A stretch of 64,000 nucleotides of DNA from IMG/VR virus record IMGVR_UViG_3300032240_001991, positions 124,001-188,000 of that record; one strand, given 5' to 3'. The notes under the pieces are model-generated. The model had not been told where the DNA came from and made no database searches. It was given only the letters and a program-made list of their open reading frames with translations. The translations under genes and the position numbers were made by a program. This document shows positions 3,911 to 18,183 of the stretch, piece after piece (position 1 is the first letter of the stretch; the number at the start of each line of letters is the position of its first letter).

Positions 3911-4711
3911 ATGGAAAACAACAAATACAGAACTATTTTTATCAGCGACGTTCATCTTGGTTCCAAAGCCTGCAAAGCAGATTTACTTTGTGACTTTTTA
4001 AAACAAAATACTGCTGATACTTTATATCTAGTAGGCGATATCATCGACGGATGGAGACTAAGTCGCAAATTCTATTGGCCACAAAGTCATAGCAATGTTA
4101 TACGCCGTATACTAACCGCTAGCAAACGCGGAACTAAAGTTATCTATGTAATTGGAAATCACGACGAAGTTATACGCAGTGCACTCCCTTTTGCTCGAGC
4201 ATTTGGTAATATAGAGCTTACAAATCTGCATAAACATCAAGGAGTTGACGGTAAAACTTATCTGGTTATACACGGCGATTTATTTGATACTGTACTACAA
4301 ACAAGATTAAAATTTCTATACCATATTGGTGACTTCTTTTATGATCTGTTGGTCACAATCAATTCTGTTTTAGCTAAAATACGTGCTAAACTTCGCAAGC
4401 CTTATTGGAGTTTGAGTGCATATCTTAAACGCCGTACTAAAGAAGCTGTAAGCTACCTAAATAATTTTGAAGAACTGATTGTAGAATATTGCCACAATAA
4501 AAAAGCAGATGGCATCATTTGTGGACATATACATCACGCAGATATTAAACGGGTTAAAGATATTGTTTATATGAACGACGGCGACTGGGTTGAAAGTTGC
4601 ACAGCGTTAGTTGAACATCACGACGGCCGATGGGAAATTATTGATTGGATTAAGGAAACCTACGATGTGGTTGCTGATAATAATAGCGATAAACATTCAC
4701 AATCCCTATGA
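3911..4711 (+). CDS. PlcP/LpxH-like metallophosphoesterase (UDP-2,3-diacylglucosamine hydrolase family)
   Basis: SDVHLG, GDIIDGW, GNHDE, HGD, CGHIH, NDGDWVESC motifs. Confidence 0.88.
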   Translation: MENNKYRTIFISDVHLGSKACKADLLCDFLKQNTADTLYLVGDIIDGWRLSRKFYWPQSHSNVIRRILTASKRGTKVIYVIGNHDEVIRSALPFARAFGNIELTNLHKHQGVDGKTYLVIHGDLFDTVLQTRLKFLYHIGDFFYDLLVTINSVLAKIRAKLRKPYWSLSAYLKRRTKEAVSYLNNFEELIVEYCHNKKADGIICGHIHHADIKRVKDIVYMNDGDWVESCTALVEHHDGRWEIIDWIKETYDVVADNNSDKHSQSL

Positions 4712-8658: not shown

Positions 8659-9013
8659 TATTTTTCAAAACGATCAAGAAAGTGTTTTATTTTTTGATCT
8701 TTCTAGTGAAGAACAAGATTCTGTTATCCAATGGTTAACAAAGAATGATTTGACTATTAACATATATTTTTATCAAGGGGAAGTTAACATTCCTTGGTTG
8801 CTACATTCTTTATCTTGTTCAACCTACAAATATGTTAACATTGACAATATGTCAGCAGTAACTAGTCACATGTCTAGTTATATATTGGCAAAAAATAATG
8901 TTTTTTATAGTACAAAAGATGTTAATATATCTGAACTATACAGTTACATTAATAATAACCGTGTTACTGATGCGGTTGATTTTTTAAAGAAGGTGTTCAG
9001 TGTCAGCCGATAA
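8624..9013 (+). CDS. hypothetical protein
   Basis: overlaps both neighbours, operon-like. Confidence 0.65.
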   Translation: MTAKITLITPPDIFQNDQESVLFFDLSSEEQDSVIQWLTKNDLTINIYFYQGEVNIPWLLHSLSCSTYKYVNIDNMSAVTSHMSSYILAKNNVFYSTKDVNISELYSYINNNRVTDAVDFLKKVFSVSR

Positions 9014-10235
9014 ACATACTTGCGACTTCTGCGGAAAAGAAAAACAAGACGTAGAAAAACTGATTGTTGGAGATACTTCAGCAATCTGCAATGATTGCGT
9101 TGACTTGTGTATTTCTATACTCAACGAAGACAAAATAAAGAAATTTCCCGTTGAAGATAACAAAGAAATCTTTAATCCTACTAAAATTAAAGAATATCTT
9201 GACCAATATGTTGTAGGGCAAGAGCAGGCTAAAATTGCATTGAGCGTTGCGGTTTGTCAGCATTTTAAAAGAACGTTTAAACCAAATAAACACATTGAGC
9301 TTGATAAAACCAATGTGCTTATTTTAGGACCTACTGGATGCGGTAAGACCATGCTAGCTCGTAAGTTAGCAGAATATCTAGAGGTTCCCTTTGCTATCTG
9401 TGATGCTACTGGACTAACAGAAGCCGGATACGTTGGTGATGACGTCGAAACAATCCTTGCTCGATTGATTTCAGTAGCTAACGGTGATATTGAAAAAGCA
9501 CAGCACGGAATCATCTATATTGACGAAATTGACAAACTAAGCAAGAAAGGTGAGAATGTTAGTACCACTCGAGATATTGGTGGAGAAGGTGTACAGCAAT
9601 CATTATTGAAGATGATTGAAGGTGCTGTTGTACGTGTTCCTGCTACTGATAAGCGGAAGCATCCTCGTGGAGAAATGCTTGAAATTGATACTAGTGGTAT
9701 ACTTTTTATCTGCGGCGGAGCATTTGTTGGTTTAGAAAAAATTATTGAGCGTCGTAATGATCCAAATACTTCTATTGGATTTAGTGCTACCATACAGTCT
9801 AAGACAGAAACTGCAATTAACTATCATAGTGTAACTACTAAGGATTTAATTAACTTTGGTTTGATTCCAGAGTTTGTTGGTCGTTTTGGACTTATAACCA
9901 GTGTTGAAGAATTGTCTACTAAAGACCTGGTTAAAATCCTTAAAGAGCCAAAAAATAGTCTGCTTGCCCAATACAAATATCTTTTTGAAATTGATGGAGT
10001 TGATTTAATTTTTGAAGATGAAGCATTGAGTAAAATTGCAGACGAAGCTAAGAAGCTTAAGACCAATGCAAGAGGATTAAAAAATATTTTAGAAAAGATT
10101 CTTTTACCATATCAGTTTGAATCTGTGGACCTTGTTAGTAGGGGCCTCGATAAAATTATGATAAGTAAAGAAGCTGTAGCAGGAAAGCCTGCAGAGCTTA
10201 TTTTTAGGAAAACCAAAACAGAAAAAAGCCTATGA
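9000..10235 (+). CDS. clpX: ATP-dependent Clp protease ATPase subunit ClpX
   Basis: CDFC..ICNDC zinc finger, [20 protein letters not shown] and IGF loops. Confidence 0.96.
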
Positions 10236-11808: not shown

Positions 11809-12342
11809 ATGGCAAAACATTTAATGGTTGATATGGAAACAATGGCAGTATCTCCTGATGCTGTTATTTTATCGTTAGGTGCAGTACACTTTGATCCGTT
11901 TGGTAACGGCGTTGGTGATACCTTGTACTTCAAACTAAACCTAGATGACCAAGATGCCCTTAAACGATCAATTGATCCTAATACTCTAAACTGGTGGTCA
12001 AAACAAGATCCAGTTATTATGGAAGAAGCATTTAGTTCTGACAACCGCATTGCTGTTGCTGATGCAGTAGATCAGTTCCATAAGTTTGCTTGGGGGTGCA
12101 ATTGTTTTTGGTCTCATGGCGCTACGTTTGACTTGGTTATTATTGAAAATCTTTATAACCAACTTAATCGTACTCCTCCTTGGAACTTTTGGCAATTGCG
12201 TGACACTCGAACAATTTTTGATCTAGGTCACGATCCGGATATGCCTAAGAACAGTAAGCATGATGCTTTGCAGGATGCTATTAGGCAGGCAGTAGGAGTA
12301 CAGAATGTTTATGCTAAACTAGGAATCAAACCTAAGCGATGA
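11809..12342 (+). CDS. DEDDh 3'-5' exoribonuclease (Rv2179c/DUF5051-like)
   Basis: MVDMET, HGATFD, RDTRT, HDALQDA. Confidence 0.88.
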   Translation: MAKHLMVDMETMAVSPDAVILSLGAVHFDPFGNGVGDTLYFKLNLDDQDALKRSIDPNTLNWWSKQDPVIMEEAFSSDNRIAVADAVDQFHKFAWGCNCFWSHGATFDLVIIENLYNQLNRTPPWNFWQLRDTRTIFDLGHDPDMPKNSKHDALQDAIRQAVGVQNVYAKLGIKPKR

Positions 12343-13095: not shown

Positions 13096-13124
13096 TTGAC
13101 AGCTTGATAAAACTATTATATACT
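13096..13124 (+). promoter_or_regulatory. sigma70-type promoter
   Basis: TTGACA-17-TATACT. Confidence 0.8.
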
Positions 13125-13144
13125 ATTTGCATAGTTTGAAATTA

Positions 13145-13246
13145 AGGATAGGTTCAGCAAACTTCAATAATACTGAAGGACGGAGTTTACTCTGTCAAGG
13201 TGAGTTTCGATTTCTCACCCAAATCAAAAAGTAGGAAACTATCCTG
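13145..13246 (+). ncRNA. structured RNA 1 upstream of the TROVE-like gene (multi-arm, T-loop-like)
   Basis: closing stem AGGATAG/CTATCCT, GTTCAGCAA motif, three internal hairpins including GGTGAG-TTTCGATTT-CTCACC. Confidence 0.6.
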
Positions 13247-13259
13247 TTTTTAATTTTTT

Positions 13260-13320
13260 AGGTTAAGTTCCGCAATTAAACAAGGTTTGTCTGCTAGGAC
13301 GTTAAACTAGTTTTAACCTG
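13260..13320 (+). ncRNA. structured RNA 2, shorter paralogue
   Basis: closing stem AGGTTAA/TTAACCT, GTTCCGCAA motif, ends CCTG like copy 1. Confidence 0.55.
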
Positions 13321-13334
13321 TAAGGAGATTCAAG

Positions 13335-14735
13335 ATGAATATGTTTGTAGAAGCAGTCAAAGAAGTACAAATTGAAACTCGTACCGCAAACGGTATGAAG
13401 ACTTTTGACTCCAGCAAGAACAGTCTTGTTGACTTGTTCTTCTCAATTGGCGCTAGCCGTGGTAAGGACCTCAGTGCTGAGTTCCATCGTGCGCTAGCTG
13501 AAGATGAAACGCTAGCACTTCGCTTGCTCATGTGGGCTCGCGATGTTCGTGGTGGGGCAGGTGAGCGCGATGTTGTTCGCACTATCTTGCTCAGTCTTGA
13601 GAAGAAGGATCCGGATGTGTTGGTGCGAGTACTTCCGCATCTTGCAGAGTTTGGTCGCTGGGACGATCTGTTGATTTTTGAAAAGAACGCTGAGATTCGT
13701 ACTCAGGCCTACTCACTTATCGATGCAGCACTTAAAGCTGGTAACGGCTTGTGTGCTAAGTGGATGCCTCGTAAGGGCGAACAGGCTGCTCGTTTGCGTG
13801 TAGGTCTAGGCATGAGTCCTAAGACCTATCGTAAGACTCTGGTTAATTTGACCAAGGTTGTTGAGCAGAATATGTGCGCTAAAAACTGGACTAACATTAA
13901 CTACAACCATGTTCCAAGCTTGGCTGCTAGCCGTTACCAGAAGGCGTTTAAGAAGCACGATCCTGAGGGCTATGAAGAATATGCTTCTAAGCTTGGAAAG
14001 GGCGAGGCTAAGATTAACGCTGGTGCAGTATATCCATATGATATCATCAAGGCACACAATGCCGGTGGTGATAGCAAGGTTGTTACTGCGCAATGGGAAG
14101 CATTGCCTAACTACGTTGGCGATGAGTTAATCTTGCCGATGGTAGACGTGTCGGGCTCTATGAGTTCTCCAGTTGGCGGCAACAAGAACTTGACTTGCAT
14201 GGATGTTTCGGTTAGCTTGGGCTTGTACCTTGCTGATAAGAATACTGGTCCGTTTAAGGACATGTTCTTAACTTTCTCAACTACTCCCGAGCTGCAAGTT
14301 CTTAAGGGTAACCTCATTAAGAAAATTGCACAGCTTCAGAAGGCAGAGTGGGGAATGAGCACTAATCTTAATGAGGCATTTAAGTTAATTCTTGATTATG
14401 CCGTTAAGGGCAAAGTTGCACCTGAGGACATGCCTAAGTATGTGCTGATCTTGTCGGACATGGAGTTTAACCAGTGCGCTGAATTCAACGACTCTGCTAT
14501 GCAGATGATTGAGCGTAAGTATGATAAGGCTGGTTACGAAATTCCAAAGATTGTGTTTTGGAATCTGAATGCGAGAGCAGGGAATGTTCCGGTTAAGCAC
14601 AATGACAAAGGCGTTGCTCTAGTCTCAGGCTTTAGCCCGGCGATTATGACTTCGATCTTGGCTGCAGAGGACTTTACTCCGTCAGCAGTAATGTTGAAGA
14701 CTTTAAATAGTCCACGTTACGCAGTAATTGCGTAA
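13335..14735 (+). CDS. TROVE/Ro60-related DUF2828 protein with C-terminal vWA domain
   Basis: RDVRGGAGER, GRWDD, AKWMPR, vWA MIDAS DVSGSM, ILSDMEF, VFWN, SGFSP. Confidence 0.85.
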   Translation: MNMFVEAVKEVQIETRTANGMKTFDSSKNSLVDLFFSIGASRGKDLSAEFHRALAEDETLALRLLMWARDVRGGAGERDVVRTILLSLEKKDPDVLVRVLPHLAEFGRWDDLLIFEKNAEIRTQAYSLIDAALKAGNGLCAKWMPRKGEQAARLRVGLGMSPKTYRKTLVNLTKVVEQNMCAKNWTNINYNHVPSLAASRYQKAFKKHDPEGYEEYASKLGKGEAKINAGAVYPYDIIKAHNAGGDSKVVTAQWEALPNYVGDELILPMVDVSGSMSSPVGGNKNLTCMDVSVSLGLYLADKNTGPFKDMFLTFSTTPELQVLKGNLIKKIAQLQKAEWGMSTNLNEAFKLILDYAVKGKVAPEDMPKYVLILSDMEFNQCAEFNDSAMQMIERKYDKAGYEIPKIVFWNLNARAGNVPVKHNDKGVALVSGFSPAIMTSILAAEDFTPSAVMLKTLNSPRYAVIA

Positions 14736-14738
14736 AAC

Positions 14739-14768
14739 AAGAAAGGCCCTTAATTGGGCCTTTCTTTT
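14739..14768. terminator. bidirectional terminator
   Basis: AAGAAAGGCCC-ttaatt-GGGCCTTTCTT between convergent genes. Confidence 0.8.
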
Positions 14769-15192
14769 ATTTAAACCAGCCTATTTTTTCTCCAGCTTCT
14801 TTACGCCTCTTCCACTCTTCTAAACTGCCTGGATAACGGATTGCCCAAATCATCCAGAATGCCATGAATAAACTTACACCCAAAACTAATTTCCAATTAT
14901 GAGTAGTGAGCCAAAGTATAACCAAACTAATGTCCATGCAAATAAACATTATCCATTTGGCTTTACTGGGATAAACTCGTTTATCTCCCCAATTACGCAA
15001 AAACGGCCCAAACAGTTTATGGTTCAATAACCAATCGTGCCATTTCTTTGAACTTTTAGCAAAGCAGTAAGCAGCAACGATAGTTGGAGTACTCCAAGGA
15101 ATCCCGGGTGTAACTATTCCAATATACGCAATACCTAAGCAAATGAAGCCAGCTGCCAGCCACAATGCCTTTTTAATTTTTTCCATATTCAC
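14767..15192 (-). CDS. YbaN/DUF454 family membrane protein
   Basis: GIVTPGIP.....AAYCFAKSS.KWHDWLLNHKLFGP. Confidence 0.85.
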   Translation of the reverse strand: MNMEKIKKALWLAAGFICLGIAYIGIVTPGIPWSTPTIVAAYCFAKSSKKWHDWLLNHKLFGPFLRNWGDKRVYPSKAKWIMFICMDISLVILWLTTHNWKLVLGVSLFMAFWMIWAIRYPGSLEEWKRRKEAGEKIGWFK

Positions 15193-15549: not shown

Positions 15550-15977
15550 AAAAGTTTATTTTGTTTTTGTTTTTGTTTCTGTCATTGTACTCAGTAAGCG
15601 CACTGGCCCAAGAATGGGAACTTATGGGTAAAACTGATGCAATGACTTGGGAATACTTGAAAGGCAGTCTTTTGCTTAAGAAAGACCAAACTGGAGAGGT
15701 ATTTTGGACTGTACAGTTTAGGATTCATCCTAATGTTGCTAATCCTACTATTGAGTTTAAGAGGTTAGCAGTTAGTTTACGAGATTGTCTTCGTGGCGAG
15801 GGCAAGCTACTTTTTATCAATACCGAAGACACTGTAGATGGTAAGGTAGAATTTCTAGTTGGTGGCGGTACTGCTGCTAGTAATATTGCAGAGTCAATCT
15901 GTATAGCTGGCAAGATTTATATGGATAAATTGGATAAGCTAGATAAACACGACGAGACACCTAAGTATAAACTATGA
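15546..15977 (+). CDS. secreted hypothetical protein
   Basis: signal peptide ending ALA; two Cys. Confidence 0.7.
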   Translation: MKKFILFLFLFLSLYSVSALAQEWELMGKTDAMTWEYLKGSLLLKKDQTGEVFWTVQFRIHPNVANPTIEFKRLAVSLRDCLRGEGKLLFINTEDTVDGKVEFLVGGGTAASNIAESICIAGKIYMDKLDKLDKHDETPKYKL

Positions 15978-16792
15978 AGATCGCATTAGTAAGTGATTTG
16001 CACCTTGAGATGGGTTATCTAGAATTACCTGGTAACGCAGATGTACTCATCTTGGGTGGTGATATTGCTGAAGCGAGAAATGTTTCAAAGCACCATCATA
16101 GCACTAAGCTAGCGTCTGACAAACCCAATGATGAATTTTATTGTTCAGAGTTCTTTCGTTGGGAGTGTGCTAAGTATGAAAAAGTTTTCTATGTGATGGG
16201 CAATCACGAGCATTATCGTGGCAAATTCCATGAGACTCGTGATACACTAGCCTATATTATGCCTGATAACGTTACTATTTTAGAAAACGAAGTAGTTGAG
16301 TATAATGGTGTAATGTTTATGGGTGCTACTCTTTGGACTGATCTTAATAAGGGAGATCCTCTGACCTCTTGGGAAGTCAGACAGAAAATGACCGATTATC
16401 ATGTAATTACACATCGTAACGAGGCAAAAGGAATCTATCATAAATTAAATCCAGAATATACTAAAGCGATACACCACGAAACGCTTAGGTATTTTCAAAA
16501 AACTCTAGATGAGAATAAGGACAAGCCCTTTGTAATTGTGACCCATCATGCTCCTAGTCGGCAAAGTATTCACGAATACTATAAGAATGACTATCAAATG
16601 AATGGCGGGTATGTTAGTGACTTAGATGACTTTATTCTTCAACATCCTAACATCAAAGTATGGACGCACGGTCATGTGCATAATACTTTTGATTACATGA
16701 TAGGTGATACTCGTGTGTTATGTAATCCTCGTGGTTACGTTCCTTACGAAGAAGGCAATGGGTTTAATCCTGACCTTACATTTGAGATCTAA
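15974..16792 (+). CDS. calcineurin-like metallophosphoesterase
   Basis: SDLH, GGD, GNHE, THHAP, HGHVH, NPRGY. Confidence 0.9.
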   Translation: MKIALVSDLHLEMGYLELPGNADVLILGGDIAEARNVSKHHHSTKLASDKPNDEFYCSEFFRWECAKYEKVFYVMGNHEHYRGKFHETRDTLAYIMPDNVTILENEVVEYNGVMFMGATLWTDLNKGDPLTSWEVRQKMTDYHVITHRNEAKGIYHKLNPEYTKAIHHETLRYFQKTLDENKDKPFVIVTHHAPSRQSIHEYYKNDYQMNGGYVSDLDDFILQHPNIKVWTHGHVHNTFDYMIGDTRVLCNPRGYVPYEEGNGFNPDLTFEI

Positions 16793-17739: not shown

Positions 17740-18183
17740 ATGAATCAGTTAGTTCGCATTGATACAAATACGTTGAAAGCCCTTAACCGGGCATTTGTTG
17801 GGTTTGATCATTTTTTCTCTAACTTTGAGGAAAGATTCGCTAATCAAATTAATAGTAACTACCCGCCTTACAATCTTTTGAAGCGTGATATGGATACTTA
17901 CGAGATCCAGATCGCAGTTACAGGGTTTGATCCAAGCGAAGTATCTGTTGAGGTAGATCAGAATAATCTGATCGTCAAGGGTGAAATCCAGCGTGATGAA
18001 GAAGTTGAGGTTGAATATCTTCATCGTGGACTCGCTGGCCGCAATTTCACTAAGGTGATTCCTTTGGCAGAGCACATTGAAGTTGGGGATGCAACGATTA
18101 AGAATGGTGTTTTGAGCATTACGCTTAATCGTGTGCTTCCAGAGGCGCTAAAGCCTCGCATTTTGAAGATTAAAGCTCTTTAA
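17740..18183 (+). CDS. small heat-shock protein Hsp20 (IbpA-like)
   Basis: VGFD, NYPPYN, IAVTGF, YLHRGLA.RNF, NGVLSI. Confidence 0.95.
   Translation: MNQLVRIDTNTLKALNRAFVGFDHFFSNFEERFANQINSNYPPYNLLKRDMDTYEIQIAVTGFDPSEVSVEVDQNNLIVKGEIQRDEEVEVEYLHRGLAGRNFTKVIPLAEHIEVGDATIKNGVLSITLNRVLPEALKPRILKIKAL

What the first reader, a model, noticed from the sequence alone, without database searches (positions are those of the whole stretch)
13096..14735. TROVE/DUF2828-vWA gene co-transcribed with two related structured RNAs, one tRNA-like
Seen: between the promoter and the gene lie two elements sharing a 7-bp closing stem with different but paired sequences (AGGATAG/CTATCCT and AGGTTAA/TTAACCT), then GTTC(A/C)GCAA, and a CCTG end. 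Element 1 encloses three hairpins (CTTCA/TGAAG, GACGGAG/CTCTGTC, GGTGAG/CTCACC), the last with a TTCGATT T-loop-like sequence. Known: Ro60/Rsr TROVE-vWA proteins bind Y RNAs encoded beside them, and YrlA RNAs mimic tRNA. Inference: a divergent Ro60/Y-RNA-like ribonucleoprotein for RNA repair or as a nuclease decoy, or autoregulatory binding sites.
Basis: partly seen in the sequence, partly recalled or inferred. Interest (0 to 1): 0.8.

Follow-up and report, generated by a model that had tools for sequence, protein, structure and literature searches.

The report
Phage Ro60-like protein with Y-like RNAs
A jumbo phage gene for a ring-shaped Ro60-like RNA-binding protein is preceded by two members of a large RNA family that is not in Rfam 15 or the papers I could search, travels with this protein across very different phages, and often mimics parts of tRNA.

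Summary
Window 13145-13246 (E1) and 13260-13320 (E2) share one module. It is a 7-bp closing stem (consensus AGGWUNN/NNAWCCU), a 3-nt linker, CAGCAA (CCGCAA in E2), and a G after the 3' strand.

The same module occurs in 1-7 tandem copies beside 82 of 87 DUF2828 genes examined, at 35-87% protein identity. These come from hosts as different as Mycobacterium, Listeria, Campylobacter, Vibrio, Salmonella and a cyanobacterium. It also occurs inside phage tRNA arrays. There are 109 different stem sequences.

The protein shows no sequence match to TROVE. Its model (pLDDT 94.7) nevertheless matches only Ro60 structures over its full length (Xenopus Ro60, Z 21.5).

The variable inserts include YrlA-type tRNA mimics, whole tRNA-like bodies, anticodon-loop mimics and the conserved E1 type. 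E2 belongs to a subclass that abuts the ribosome-binding site, so it is probably a translational operator.

Neither Rfam 15 nor the searchable literature describes these RNAs. A preprint shows that the likely Felixounavirus orthologue counters the ppl defence.

RNA expression, protein binding and function are untested. My verdict is a divergent Ro60/Y-RNA-like system: a new variant of a known kind.

The parts
13096..13124 (+). Sigma-70-type promoter, TTGACA-17 nt-TATACT (11 of 12 matches). The predicted start lies about 13131, roughly 14 nt before E1.
   Evidence: The Listeria phage AG20 locus has the same layout: promoter, elements, then gene.
13145..13246 (+). Element E1 (102 nt). It has a closing stem 13145-13151/13239-13245, linker GTT, and CAGCAA at 13155-13160. 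Hairpins lie at 13162-13178, 13179-13196 and 13199-13219; the third is T-loop-like (GGUGAG-UUUCGAUUU-CUCACC). A conserved A-rich tail with AAAAAGUAG occupies 13220-13238, and the terminal G is 13246.
   Evidence: Fold z = -4.6. Eight relatives share the closing stem, hairpin 3 and tail; pairs in the closing stem and in hairpin 3 are kept through changes on both sides. Hairpin 2 has an unrelated sequence in each relative but folds as a hairpin there in most of them when folded singly.
13247..13259 (+). U/A-rich spacer (UUUUUAAUUUUUU) between E1 and E2. It may be a processing site or a partial termination site.
   Evidence: Across the family, U is favoured just before the 5' A and UU just after the 3' G, and tandem copies are about 9-13 nt apart. 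Function is inferred.
13260..13320 (+). Element E2 (61 nt). It has a closing stem 13260-13266/13313-13319, linker GTT, the variant core CCGCAA at 13270-13275 and a poorly structured interior. The terminal G at 13320 lies 2 nt before the Shine-Dalgarno sequence. It is a candidate translational operator.
   Evidence: Covariance model R1 gives E 4.6e-7. In the subclass next to the Shine-Dalgarno sequence, 15 of 41 elements carry the CCGCA core against 6 of 149 elsewhere, p 2e-7.
13323..13327 (+). Shine-Dalgarno sequence AGGAG, 7 nt before the ATG at 13335.
13335..14735 (+). Gene for a 466-aa Ro60-like protein (Pfam DUF2828 + DUF7788, phrog_850). The model shows a helical-repeat ring closed by a vWA domain with an intact MIDAS motif (D271, S273, S275, T343, D375).
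14739..14766 (+). Intrinsic terminator: an 11-bp stem, 6 of them G-C, followed by a U-rich stretch.

Best explanation
E1 and E2 belong to a large family of phage non-coding RNAs that are partners of a divergent, Ro60-fold protein (DUF2828/DUF7788). The arrangement parallels Y RNAs and Ro60.

Shown here:
- All members share one module: a 7-bp closing stem (AGGWUNN / NNAWCCU), a 3-nt linker (NUW), CAGCAA, an A-rich 3' strand, and G(UU).
- The stem is maintained by compensatory changes.
- The module is found, on the same strand, next to DUF2828 genes or inside tRNA arrays of DUF2828-encoding phages.
- The protein has the Ro60 ring + vWA fold.

Inferred:
- The promoter at 13096 transcribes E1, E2 and the gene together.
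- The protein binds the conserved module.
- E1-type and other long elements are released as stable RNAs. Cutting would occur in the U/A-rich spacers or, in tRNA arrays, through tRNA processing.
- The variable inserts are effector modules that engage tRNA-directed host factors such as nucleases, exoribonucleases or modification enzymes. The inserts include permuted and unpermuted tRNA mimics, anticodon-stem-loop mimics and the E1 type with a T-loop-like hairpin.
- E2 is a short copy with a variant core (CCGCAA) ending 2 nt before the Shine-Dalgarno sequence. It would act as an operator: surplus protein binds it and blocks ribosome entry, setting the protein level against the RNA level.

The biological role is most likely protection of the phage's RNA or tRNA economy against host defence. 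A preprint shows that the likely Felixounavirus orthologue counters the ppl defence system.
For: **Module and covariation**
- Non-circular register test: 194 hits against 1-8 in the controls.
- 230 unique elements with 109 distinct stems.
- 99.4% of stem cells are paired, with 99 double changes against 27 in shuffles. Partners slid by 1-3 columns pair only 31-47%.

**Association with the gene**
- 82 of 87 loci have at least one element within 1.2 kb; 222 of 284 elements lie within 1 kb of the gene.
- The motif is present beside homologues of only 35-52% identity: phages of Mycobacterium, Listeria, Campylobacter, Vibrio and Salmonella, and a cyanophage.
- Inverse test: of 63 pattern matches with a 3' partner, 24 have the gene in the locus, all on the same strand. 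Only 1 of 67 partner-less matches does.
- Elements without a nearby gene lie in tRNA arrays in 28 of 31 loci, against 1 of 31 control loci.
- Three of five such contigs carry the gene elsewhere.
- GAP32 keeps its copies in a tRNA island about 200 kb from the gene.
- T4 and T5 have neither the gene nor the RNA.

**Protein fold**
- Model pLDDT 94.7.
- The top five PDB hits are all Ro60 proteins, E 9e-9 to 2e-5. VIA-align Z is 21.5 / 16.8 / 15.2 / 14.1 / 12.2, against at most 9.9 for vWA-only hits.
- The MIDAS residues are invariant.

**tRNA mimicry**
- The copy at G000:191626-191739 scores YrlA RF02553 at 49.9 bits, E 1e-9.
- Several insert classes were found.
- 29 of 75 short elements carry an anticodon-loop-like hairpin, against 1.4 +/- 1.2 in shuffles.

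**Operator**
- 41 unique elements end 11-31 nt before the start codon.
- These are enriched for the CCGCA core, p 2e-7.

**Precedents**
- Rsr-YrlA (PMC4201824).
- Thermus phage phiRo60 binds Yrl RNAs encoded upstream of its gene and attenuates host PNPase (PMC12135203).
- Bas63 gp130 counters ppl (10.1101/2024.10.10.617714).
Against: - No direct evidence exists that the RNAs are made, processed or bound. No RNA sequencing run could be listed.
- Bas63 gp130 restored T7 growth on ppl when expressed alone from a plasmid or from T7. At least that activity therefore may not need the phage RNAs, unless host RNAs substitute.
- The binding motif differs from those of known Ro60 partners (GNCGAA, GGUCCGA). 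The analogy therefore rests on fold and gene context, not on a shared RNA site.
- E2's interior is barely structured (z = -0.2).
- The co-location of protein and RNA could partly reflect a shared preference for tRNA islands.
- That Bas63 gp130 is the DUF2828 orthologue is inferred: Bas63 is a Felixounavirus and its gene lies upstream of tRNAs, but I did not align the sequence.
Confidence: 0.7

Rival explanations
1. The elements are purely cis-acting leader structures of the DUF2828 mRNA, such as autoregulatory operators, attenuators or a riboswitch-like leader. On this reading they are not stand-alone RNAs.
For: In most loci they lie between the promoter and the gene. The last copy abuts the Shine-Dalgarno sequence in 41 unique cases. 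Vibrio phage K566 has a 5' half-site in its 5' UTR.
Against: - Copies lie downstream of the gene in the Mycobacterium phage, the Felixounavirus and several IMG/VR loci.
- Other copies sit between tRNA genes, far from the gene: 54 kb away in this genome and about 200 kb away in GAP32.
- Up to 7 tandem copies with elaborate, different inserts are hard to explain as one leader.
Confidence: 0.08
2. The elements are tRNA-derived relics or processing punctuation of phage tRNA arrays. They would be recognised by RNase P/Z/E or another factor and have no specific link to the DUF2828 protein. Gene and RNAs would co-occur only because both favour tRNA islands.
For: Many inserts contain T and D arms. Some score as tRNA in Rfam (L057 9733-9805 at 48 bits). 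Elements are spaced like tRNAs within arrays. The closing stem has the length of an acceptor stem (7 bp).
Against: - The conserved stem+CAGCAA module is not a tRNA feature, and minimal elements of 36-66 nt have no tRNA arms.
- In the window the gene and its two elements lie 36 kb from the nearest tRNA gene.
- The tRNA-rich phage T5, and T4, lack both the gene and the elements.
- Bxz1 has a canonical TROVE gene and a YrlA-like RNA but no such module.
Confidence: 0.1
3. The RNAs are real trans-acting RNAs, but their conserved module is bound by a different partner. That partner could be a host protein (PNPase, Hfq, RNase) or another phage protein. The Ro60-like protein would act on other substrates, for example misfolded or damaged host RNAs.
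For: gp130 works alone against ppl in a T7 or plasmid context. Ro60 proteins also bind misfolded RNAs without Y RNA (PMC12135203 introduction).
Against: Genome-level and strand-level linkage to the DUF2828 gene holds across phages of at least five unrelated host groups. No other gene is consistently linked; the neighbouring genes are conserved only in close relatives.
Confidence: 0.1

Closest known systems
Bacterial Rsr (Ro60) with YrlA/YrlB Y RNAs (Salmonella, M. smegmatis; Rfam RF02553; Chen et al. 2014, PMC4201824)
   Same: - The protein is a ring + vWA, and its RNAs are encoded beside its gene.
- The RNAs are modular: their 5' and 3' ends pair, and a short conserved motif lies on the 5' strand next to the stem.
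- The effector module is a permuted tRNA mimic (T arm, acceptor hairpin, D arm).
- There are several RNAs per locus.
   Different: - The protein is not detectable as TROVE by sequence (11-16% identity in structural alignments).
- The conserved motif is a 7-bp AGGWU stem + NUW + CAGCAA, not GNCGAA.
- No element reaches the YrlA gathering score.
- Inserts also include unpermuted tRNA bodies, anticodon-loop mimics, the E1 type and domains of about 160 and 250 nt.
- Arrays hold up to 7 copies, and copies are interleaved with tRNA genes.
Thermus phage phiLo phiRo60 with Yrl1/Yrl2 (Hu et al. 2025, PMC12135203; PDB 9KOP, 9L5Y)
   Same: - It is a phage-encoded Ro60-fold protein with two candidate partner RNAs directly upstream of its gene.
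- It is the best or second-best structural match to the window protein (Foldseek E 8.7e-9, VIA Z 16.8).
- It is proposed to act against host RNA machinery or defence.
   Different: - phiRo60 is annotated as a TROVE-domain protein.
- Its RNAs were picked by the CGAA motif.
- No comparative support or tRNA mimicry was reported for them.
Bas63 (Felixounavirus) gp130, a Ro60-like counter of the ppl defence (PhageMaP preprint, 10.1101/2024.10.10.617714)
   Same: - It is probably the same protein family. All 252 Felixounavirus-type records carry the DUF2828 gene, and in NJ12 (L003) it lies just upstream of tRNA genes.
- The authors noted the Ro60 fold and guessed that Y RNAs hide among the tRNA genes.
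   Different: - The partner RNAs were not identified. Here they are located between, not among, the annotated tRNAs (L003 3216-3283, 3383-3437, 3750-3818, 3837-3962).
- gp130 alone sufficed against ppl.
Translational operators that mimic a protein's main RNA ligand (ribosomal-protein operators, the E. coli thrS leader, T4 RegA/gp32; from general knowledge)
   Same: E2 is a copy of the protein's presumed RNA ligand. It sits against the ribosome-binding site of the protein's own mRNA, and its core deviates slightly from the consensus.
   Different: Repression has not been shown. In many loci the operator-like copy is the only short element, so it could also be a bona fide partner RNA.

Membership tests
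Ro60 / TROVE protein family (Pfam PF05731 + vWA) | Significant sequence match to the TROVE profile or to solved Ro60 proteins | tested here: not met
   Pfam gives only DUF2828, DUF7788 and a weak VWA_2 match, with no TROVE hit at E <= 0.1. phmmer against the PDB gives nothing at E <= 10. A 65-sequence profile ranks phiRo60, Xenopus Ro60 and human Ro60 first, but at E 0.06-0.6 and only over the MIDAS stretch.
Ro60 / TROVE protein family (Pfam PF05731 + vWA) | Fold: a ring of HEAT-like helical repeats closed by a C-terminal vWA domain | tested here: met
   The model has pLDDT 94.7 and pTM 0.93. The Foldseek top five are all Ro60 structures with full-length alignments. VIA-align gives 1YVR Z 21.5 with 409 of 466 residues aligned, against Z <= 9.9 for vWA-only hits.
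Ro60 / TROVE protein family (Pfam PF05731 + vWA) | MIDAS motif (DxSxS ... T ... D) in the vWA domain | tested here: met
   D271, S273, S275, T343 and D375 are invariant in 65 sequences. The motif aligns to the phiRo60 DVSGSM stretch.
Ro60 / TROVE protein family (Pfam PF05731 + vWA) | Binds Y RNA on the outer surface and single-stranded RNA ends in the central hole | not testable with these tools
   Needs EMSA, CLIP or a structure of the complex.
Y RNA / YrlA (Rfam RF00019, RF02553) | Reaches the Rfam gathering score | tested here: not met
   E1 and E2 have no Y RNA or YrlA hit even at E <= 10. The sibling copy at G000:191641-191750 scores 49.9 bits against a gathering score of 69, and only its T/acceptor/D part aligns.
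Y RNA / YrlA (Rfam RF00019, RF02553) | Conserved Ro60-binding motif (GGUCCGA in animals, GNCGAA(N)G in bacteria) in or beside the terminal stem | tested here: not met
   A different conserved motif, NUW-CAGCAA, follows a 7-bp AGGWU stem. Bxz1, a true TROVE phage, has a YrlA-like RNA but no such module.
Y RNA / YrlA (Rfam RF00019, RF02553) | The 5' and 3' ends pair in a stem that encloses a variable effector module, and the RNA is encoded near the Ro60 gene | tested here: met
Y RNA / YrlA (Rfam RF00019, RF02553) | tRNA-like effector module (T arm, acceptor-like hairpin, D arm) | tested here: inconclusive
   E1 has only a T-loop-like hairpin, which is conserved in its subclass. E2 has none. Complete modules exist in the sibling copy at G000:191626-191739 and in many relatives.
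tRNA | Cloverleaf recognised by ARAGORN or Rfam RF00005 | tested here: not met
   No tRNA call at 13096-13334.
Autoregulatory translational operator | A copy of the protein's RNA ligand placed at its own ribosome-binding site | tested here: met
   E2 ends 2 nt before AGGAG. 41 unique elements in related loci end 11-31 nt before the start codon and are enriched for the variant core.
Autoregulatory translational operator | The protein represses translation of its own mRNA through the site | not testable with these tools
   Needs a reporter assay or toeprinting.

The most novel reading that the evidence does not exclude
The Ro60-like protein and its RNA arrays form an RNA-based counter-defence platform. 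Each RNA uses the same handle (stem + CAGCAA) to dock on the ring and displays a different piece of tRNA: the elbow, a whole body, or the anticodon loop of a particular tRNA (loops read as Thr, Ser, Lys, Tyr, Asn and others). Phages could then titrate or redirect tRNA-targeting host nucleases and other RNA-directed defences, and could swap decoys as modules. A decoy-like operator would keep protein and RNAs in balance.
Probability: 0.25. Interest if true: 0.9.

Novelty: new variant of a known kind. Interest (0 to 1): 0.8.

Why it matters
DUF2828 proteins are among the commoner unexplained phage proteins. The search found 6,572 clusters at 50% identity with E <= 0.001 and 709 deposited phage genomes. 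These include Felix O1-type, Listeria Pecentumvirus (AG20), Campylobacter Fletchervirus, staphylococcal and enterococcal phages and several jumbo phages.

The protein had been recognised as Ro-like, and one likely orthologue counters a defence system. Its RNA partners were unknown. This work gives a precise, searchable RNA signature. It places about 300 candidate partner RNAs, shows that they are modular tRNA mimics tied to phage tRNA islands, and points to a built-in operator.

That makes three questions directly testable:
- how a Ro60-type ring recognises its RNA;
- what phage tRNA islands are for;
- how Ro-like proteins defeat host defence.

It also extends the Ro60/Y RNA partnership to a second, sequence-unrelated protein clade.

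Tried and rejected
- Rfam on the region at E <= 10 gave only noise: miRNA, snoRNA and CRISPR-DR hits at E >= 1.
- Megablast of the locus against deposited phages found nothing.
- phmmer of the protein against PDB sequences found nothing. NCBIfam also found nothing.
- Sequencing runs: only DNA metagenomes hold the locus and no RNA run could be listed.
- RNA-repair context: the phage record has no RtcB and no PF09414 RNA ligase. An RNA ligase sits next to the gene in GAP32, but this is not general.
- The Rv2179c-like 3'-5' exoribonuclease two genes upstream looked like a possible Ro60 partner nuclease. The linkage holds only in 9 of 80 loci, all close relatives, so I rejected it as a family feature.
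- A relaxed motif scan of the whole genome (6 of 7 pairs, degenerate core) gave similar noise on both strands and no convincing fifth copy.
- Model R1, built from short elements, does not pick up E1 in the own genome because the insert is too long. E1's membership rests on the pattern scan and the subclass alignment.
- I considered a ribozyme, a retron ncRNA and CRISPR-like repeats. I rejected them because there is no Rfam signal, no reverse transcriptase or cas gene nearby, and the repeats have variable stems.
Full report
**1. What is there**

The window lies in a 326,658-bp, 38% G+C virus record, at G000:C1:124001-188000. A TTGACA-17-TATACT promoter lies at 13096-13124. Two elements follow, then a Shine-Dalgarno sequence, a 466-codon gene (13335-14735) and a strong terminator at 14739-14766.

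Each has a 7-bp closing stem: AGGATAG/CTATCCT in E1 and AGGTTAA/TTAACCT in E2. GTT follows, then CAGCAA (E1) or CCGCAA (E2), and a G follows the 3' strand.

E1 folds into the closing stem plus three hairpins (-33.1 kcal/mol, z = -4.6, 0 of 200 shuffles as good). E2's interior is barely structured (z = -0.2). Neither ARAGORN nor Rfam, even at E <= 10, recognises anything here.

**2. The protein**

Pfam sees DUF2828 + DUF7788, and PHROGs places it in phrog_850, 'RNA-binding protein'. The family is very large:
- 709 deposited phage genomes, some annotated 'Ro-like RNA binding protein';
- 6,572 clusters at 50% identity with E <= 0.001.

Sequence methods do not connect it to Ro60. There is no TROVE hit and no PDB hit by phmmer. 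A 65-sequence profile ranks Ro60 proteins first, but at E 0.06-0.6 and only over the MIDAS stretch.

The structure prediction is confident (pLDDT 94.7, pTM 0.93). Its only full-length matches in the PDB are the five Ro60 structures:

| Structure | Foldseek E | VIA-align Z |
|---|---|---|
| phiLo phiRo60 (9KOP) | 8.7e-9 | 16.8 |
| Xenopus Ro60 (1YVR) | 1.3e-8 | 21.5 (409 residues aligned) |
| phiLo phiRo60 dimer (9L5Y) | 1.2e-7 | 15.2 |
| D. radiodurans Rsr (2NVO) | 1.8e-7 | 12.2 |
| Human Ro60 (9NEN) | 2e-5 | 14.1 |

The next hits are vWA domains only (E > 0.03, Z <= 9.9). The MIDAS residues D271, S273, S275, T343 and D375 are invariant. The protein therefore has the Ro60 fold without detectable TROVE sequence similarity.

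**3. The RNA motif is a family**

I first saw the same module by eye in two phages. It occurs three times upstream of the 52%-identical gene of Synechococcus phage BUCT-ZZ01 and once downstream of the Felixounavirus NJ12 gene. I then fetched 80 IMG/VR loci with homologues of 53-87% identity.

A test that does not presuppose pairing gave a clean result. Of 916 CAGCA[AT] sites on the gene strand, 194 have the exact Watson-Crick complement of the 7-mer lying 3 nt upstream. That complement is followed by G and lies 12-300 nt downstream. Linkers of 0, 1, 2, 4, 5 or 6 nt, or the opposite strand, give 1-8.

There are 230 unique elements with 109 different 5' stems. The consensus is A-G-G-W-U-N-N, N-U-W, C-A-G-C-A-A, then an A-rich stretch, then N-N-A-W-C-C-U, then G-U-U.

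On a 45-sequence alignment of short members, 99.4% of stem cells pair. There are 99 double-sided changes against 27 +/- 4 in shuffles, and slid partners pair only 31-47%. Because those sequences were selected for pairing, one search is the independent test.

**4. Association with the gene**

- 82 of 87 loci have 1-7 elements within 1.2 kb (mode 2-3). They are arranged in tandem with U/A-rich spacers of about 9-13 nt.
- 222 of 284 elements lie within 1 kb of the gene, mostly upstream and sometimes just downstream.
- The module is also present beside homologues of only 35-43% identity: Mycobacterium phage Krypton555 (three copies downstream), Listeria phage AG20 (three upstream, after a promoter) and Campylobacter phage F375 (two upstream). 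In Vibrio phage K566 a full copy lies 3.7 kb upstream next to a tRNA gene and a 5' half-site lies in the gene's 5' UTR.
- GAP32 has none near the gene. A covariance model of the short elements (R1) and the pattern scan found at least 7 copies in its tRNA island about 200 kb away.
- The window's own genome has two further copies, outside the window, between tRNA genes: G000:191626-191739 and 193424-193480.

The inverse test points the same way. A 14-base 5' pattern gave 130 matches in IMG/VR.
- 63 of them have a proper 3' partner, and 24 of those have a DUF2828 gene in the locus, always on the same strand.
- Only 1 of the 67 partner-less matches has the gene.
- The 'orphan' elements lie in tRNA arrays in 28 of 31 loci, against 1 of 31 control loci.
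- Three of five orphan contigs carry the gene elsewhere.

Controls agree. T5 is tRNA-rich, and T4 carries a few tRNA genes; both have neither the gene nor R1 hits. Bxz1 has a true TROVE gene and a YrlA-like RNA upstream of it, but no such module.

**5. What the inserts are**

- Class A is a permuted tRNA mimic: T arm, acceptor-like hairpin, D arm. The own-genome copy at 191626 matches Rfam YrlA at 49.9 bits (gathering score 69, E 1e-9) in that part only; the outer stems of the YrlA model do not fit. Krypton555, GAP32 and many IMG/VR loci have the same type.
- Class B holds an unpermuted D arm, anticodon arm and T arm. Two of these score as tRNA in Rfam.
- Short elements (36-66 nt): 29 of 75 carry a hairpin of at least 4 bp with a 7-nt loop of the form YU-NNN-R-N. 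That is an anticodon-loop look-alike, and shuffles give 1.4 +/- 1.2. The 'anticodons' read as Thr, Ser, Lys, Tyr, Asn and others.
- Class C is the E1 type. It has variable hairpins, a conserved GGUGAG-UUUCGAUUU-CUCAC hairpin and an AAAAAGUAG tail. Compensatory changes occur in the closing stem and hairpin 3. Hairpin 2 has entirely different sequences in different relatives. Versions of about 160 nt extend this type.
- A class of about 245-280 nt holds a large conserved domain with no Rfam match.

E1 is therefore a real, conserved structured RNA. It is 'tRNA-like' only in one T-loop-like hairpin.

**6. E2 and the ribosome-binding site**

41 unique elements end 11-31 nt before the start codon, and the Shine-Dalgarno sequence starts 1-12 nt after their terminal G. 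Most are short (36-69 nt). They carry the CCGCA core in 15 of 41 cases, against 6 of 149 elsewhere (Fisher p 2e-7).

E2 is one of them: CCGCAA, with AGGAG starting 2 nt after the G. This pattern is what a translational operator that mimics the protein's main ligand would look like. Repression itself is not shown.

**7. Mechanism**

Shown:
- a conserved, covarying RNA module;
- its specific linkage to the gene and to tRNA islands;
- the Ro60 fold;
- tRNA-mimicking inserts;
- a subclass next to the Shine-Dalgarno sequence.

Inferred:
- co-transcription from the 13096 promoter;
- release of the elements as RNAs, by cutting in the spacers or by tRNA processing;
- binding of the module by the protein;
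- effector roles of the inserts towards tRNA-directed host factors;
- autoregulation through E2.

The inference rests on three precedents:
- Rsr-YrlA, where the motif GNCGAA lies near the 5' end and the module is tRNA-like (PMC4201824).
- Thermus phage phiRo60, which binds two RNAs encoded upstream of its gene and attenuates host PNPase (PMC12135203).
- Bas63 gp130, a Felixounavirus protein with Ro60-like structure that counters the ppl defence. Its authors guessed that Y RNAs hide among the downstream tRNA genes (10.1101/2024.10.10.617714).

In the Felixounavirus NJ12 the elements sit between the annotated tRNAs. One caution: gp130 alone rescued T7 on ppl, so that activity may not need the RNAs.

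**8. Novelty**

The Ro-like nature of the protein is already noted in annotations and in one preprint, and Y RNA/Ro60 systems in phages are known. I did not find the following described: the RNA family itself, its binding-module signature, its modular tRNA-part mimicry, its place in tRNA arrays and the operator-like copy.
- There is no Rfam 15 family for it.
- No relevant paper turned up for DUF2828, YrlA + phage, 'Y RNA-like' + phage, or Ro60 + phage.
- The 2014 YrlA survey was limited to TROVE-annotated genomes.

I file it as a new variant of a known kind.

**9. Limits**

- No expression or binding data exist.
- Element counts come from my own pattern scan, which requires 7 of 7 pairs, at most one G-U pair and a fixed 3-nt linker, so they are lower bounds.
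- The IMG/VR loci are partly redundant.
- The virus record is called 36% complete by CheckV, so the absence of RNA-repair genes is weak evidence.
- The orthology of Bas63 gp130 is inferred from taxonomy and gene context, not from an alignment.

Noticed in passing
outside the window: G000:C1:191626-191739 and 193424-193480 (L004 3626-3739 and 5424-5480): These are two further members of the RNA family in the same phage, each lying between tRNA genes with spacers of about 5-18 nt. The first is a YrlA-type tRNA mimic (Rfam YrlA 49.9 bits, below the gathering score). The second is a minimal 57-nt element.
   Followed up: yes
window 11809-12342 (+): This gene encodes an Rv2179c-like 3'-5' exoribonuclease (PF16473, E 9e-36) two genes upstream of the Ro-like gene. 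That is suggestive, because bacterial Ro60 works with 3'-5' exoribonucleases. The linkage is kept only in 9 of 80 related loci, all close relatives.
   Followed up: yes
L054 7876-8304: A GOLLD RNA (RF02032, 196.6 bits) lies inside the tRNA array about 1.7 kb upstream of that phage's DUF2828 gene, among CAGCAA-type elements.
   Followed up: no
L001 about 4070-4330 (Synechococcus phage BUCT-ZZ01): Two tRNA-like genes just downstream of the DUF2828 gene share an identical insert of about 35 nt in the anticodon region. It may be an intron or a mobile insert.
   Followed up: no
L002 13-1278 (Cronobacter phage GAP32): An RNA ligase gene lies directly upstream of the DUF2828 gene, while the partner-type RNAs sit about 200 kb away in the tRNA island (L089).
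   Followed up: partly
L183, L198, L104, L169 (anticodon cta) and L190 (anticodon tta): Phage tRNA arrays that hold orphan elements also carry suppressor-type tRNAs, which hints at stop-codon reassignment in these phages.
   Followed up: no
e.g. L011 9698-9945, L058 5032-5278, L082 9603-9879: A class of elements about 245-280 nt long (stems AGGATGG/AGGATGA) contains a conserved large domain. It has no match at Rfam gathering scores and its nature is unknown.
   Followed up: partly
L061 9444-9695, L074 4648-4901, L042 9196-9450, L045 475-729: These YrlA-type elements have an acceptor-like hairpin extended by a very stable structured insert of about 150 nt (MFE -84 to -105 kcal/mol).
   Followed up: no
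L088 3966-3981 (Vibrio phage K566): The 5' UTR of the DUF2828 gene carries only the 5' half of the module (AGACATT-ATA-CAGCAA) next to the ribosome-binding site. A full copy with the same stem lies 3.7 kb upstream beside a tRNA gene.
   Followed up: no
window 9000-10235, 14767-15192 (-), 15974-16792, 17740-18183: The neighbouring genes encode a ClpX-like AAA+ ATPase with a zinc finger, a DUF454 membrane protein on the opposite strand, a calcineurin-like phosphoesterase and an Hsp20. None is linked to the Ro-like gene beyond close relatives.
   Followed up: partly
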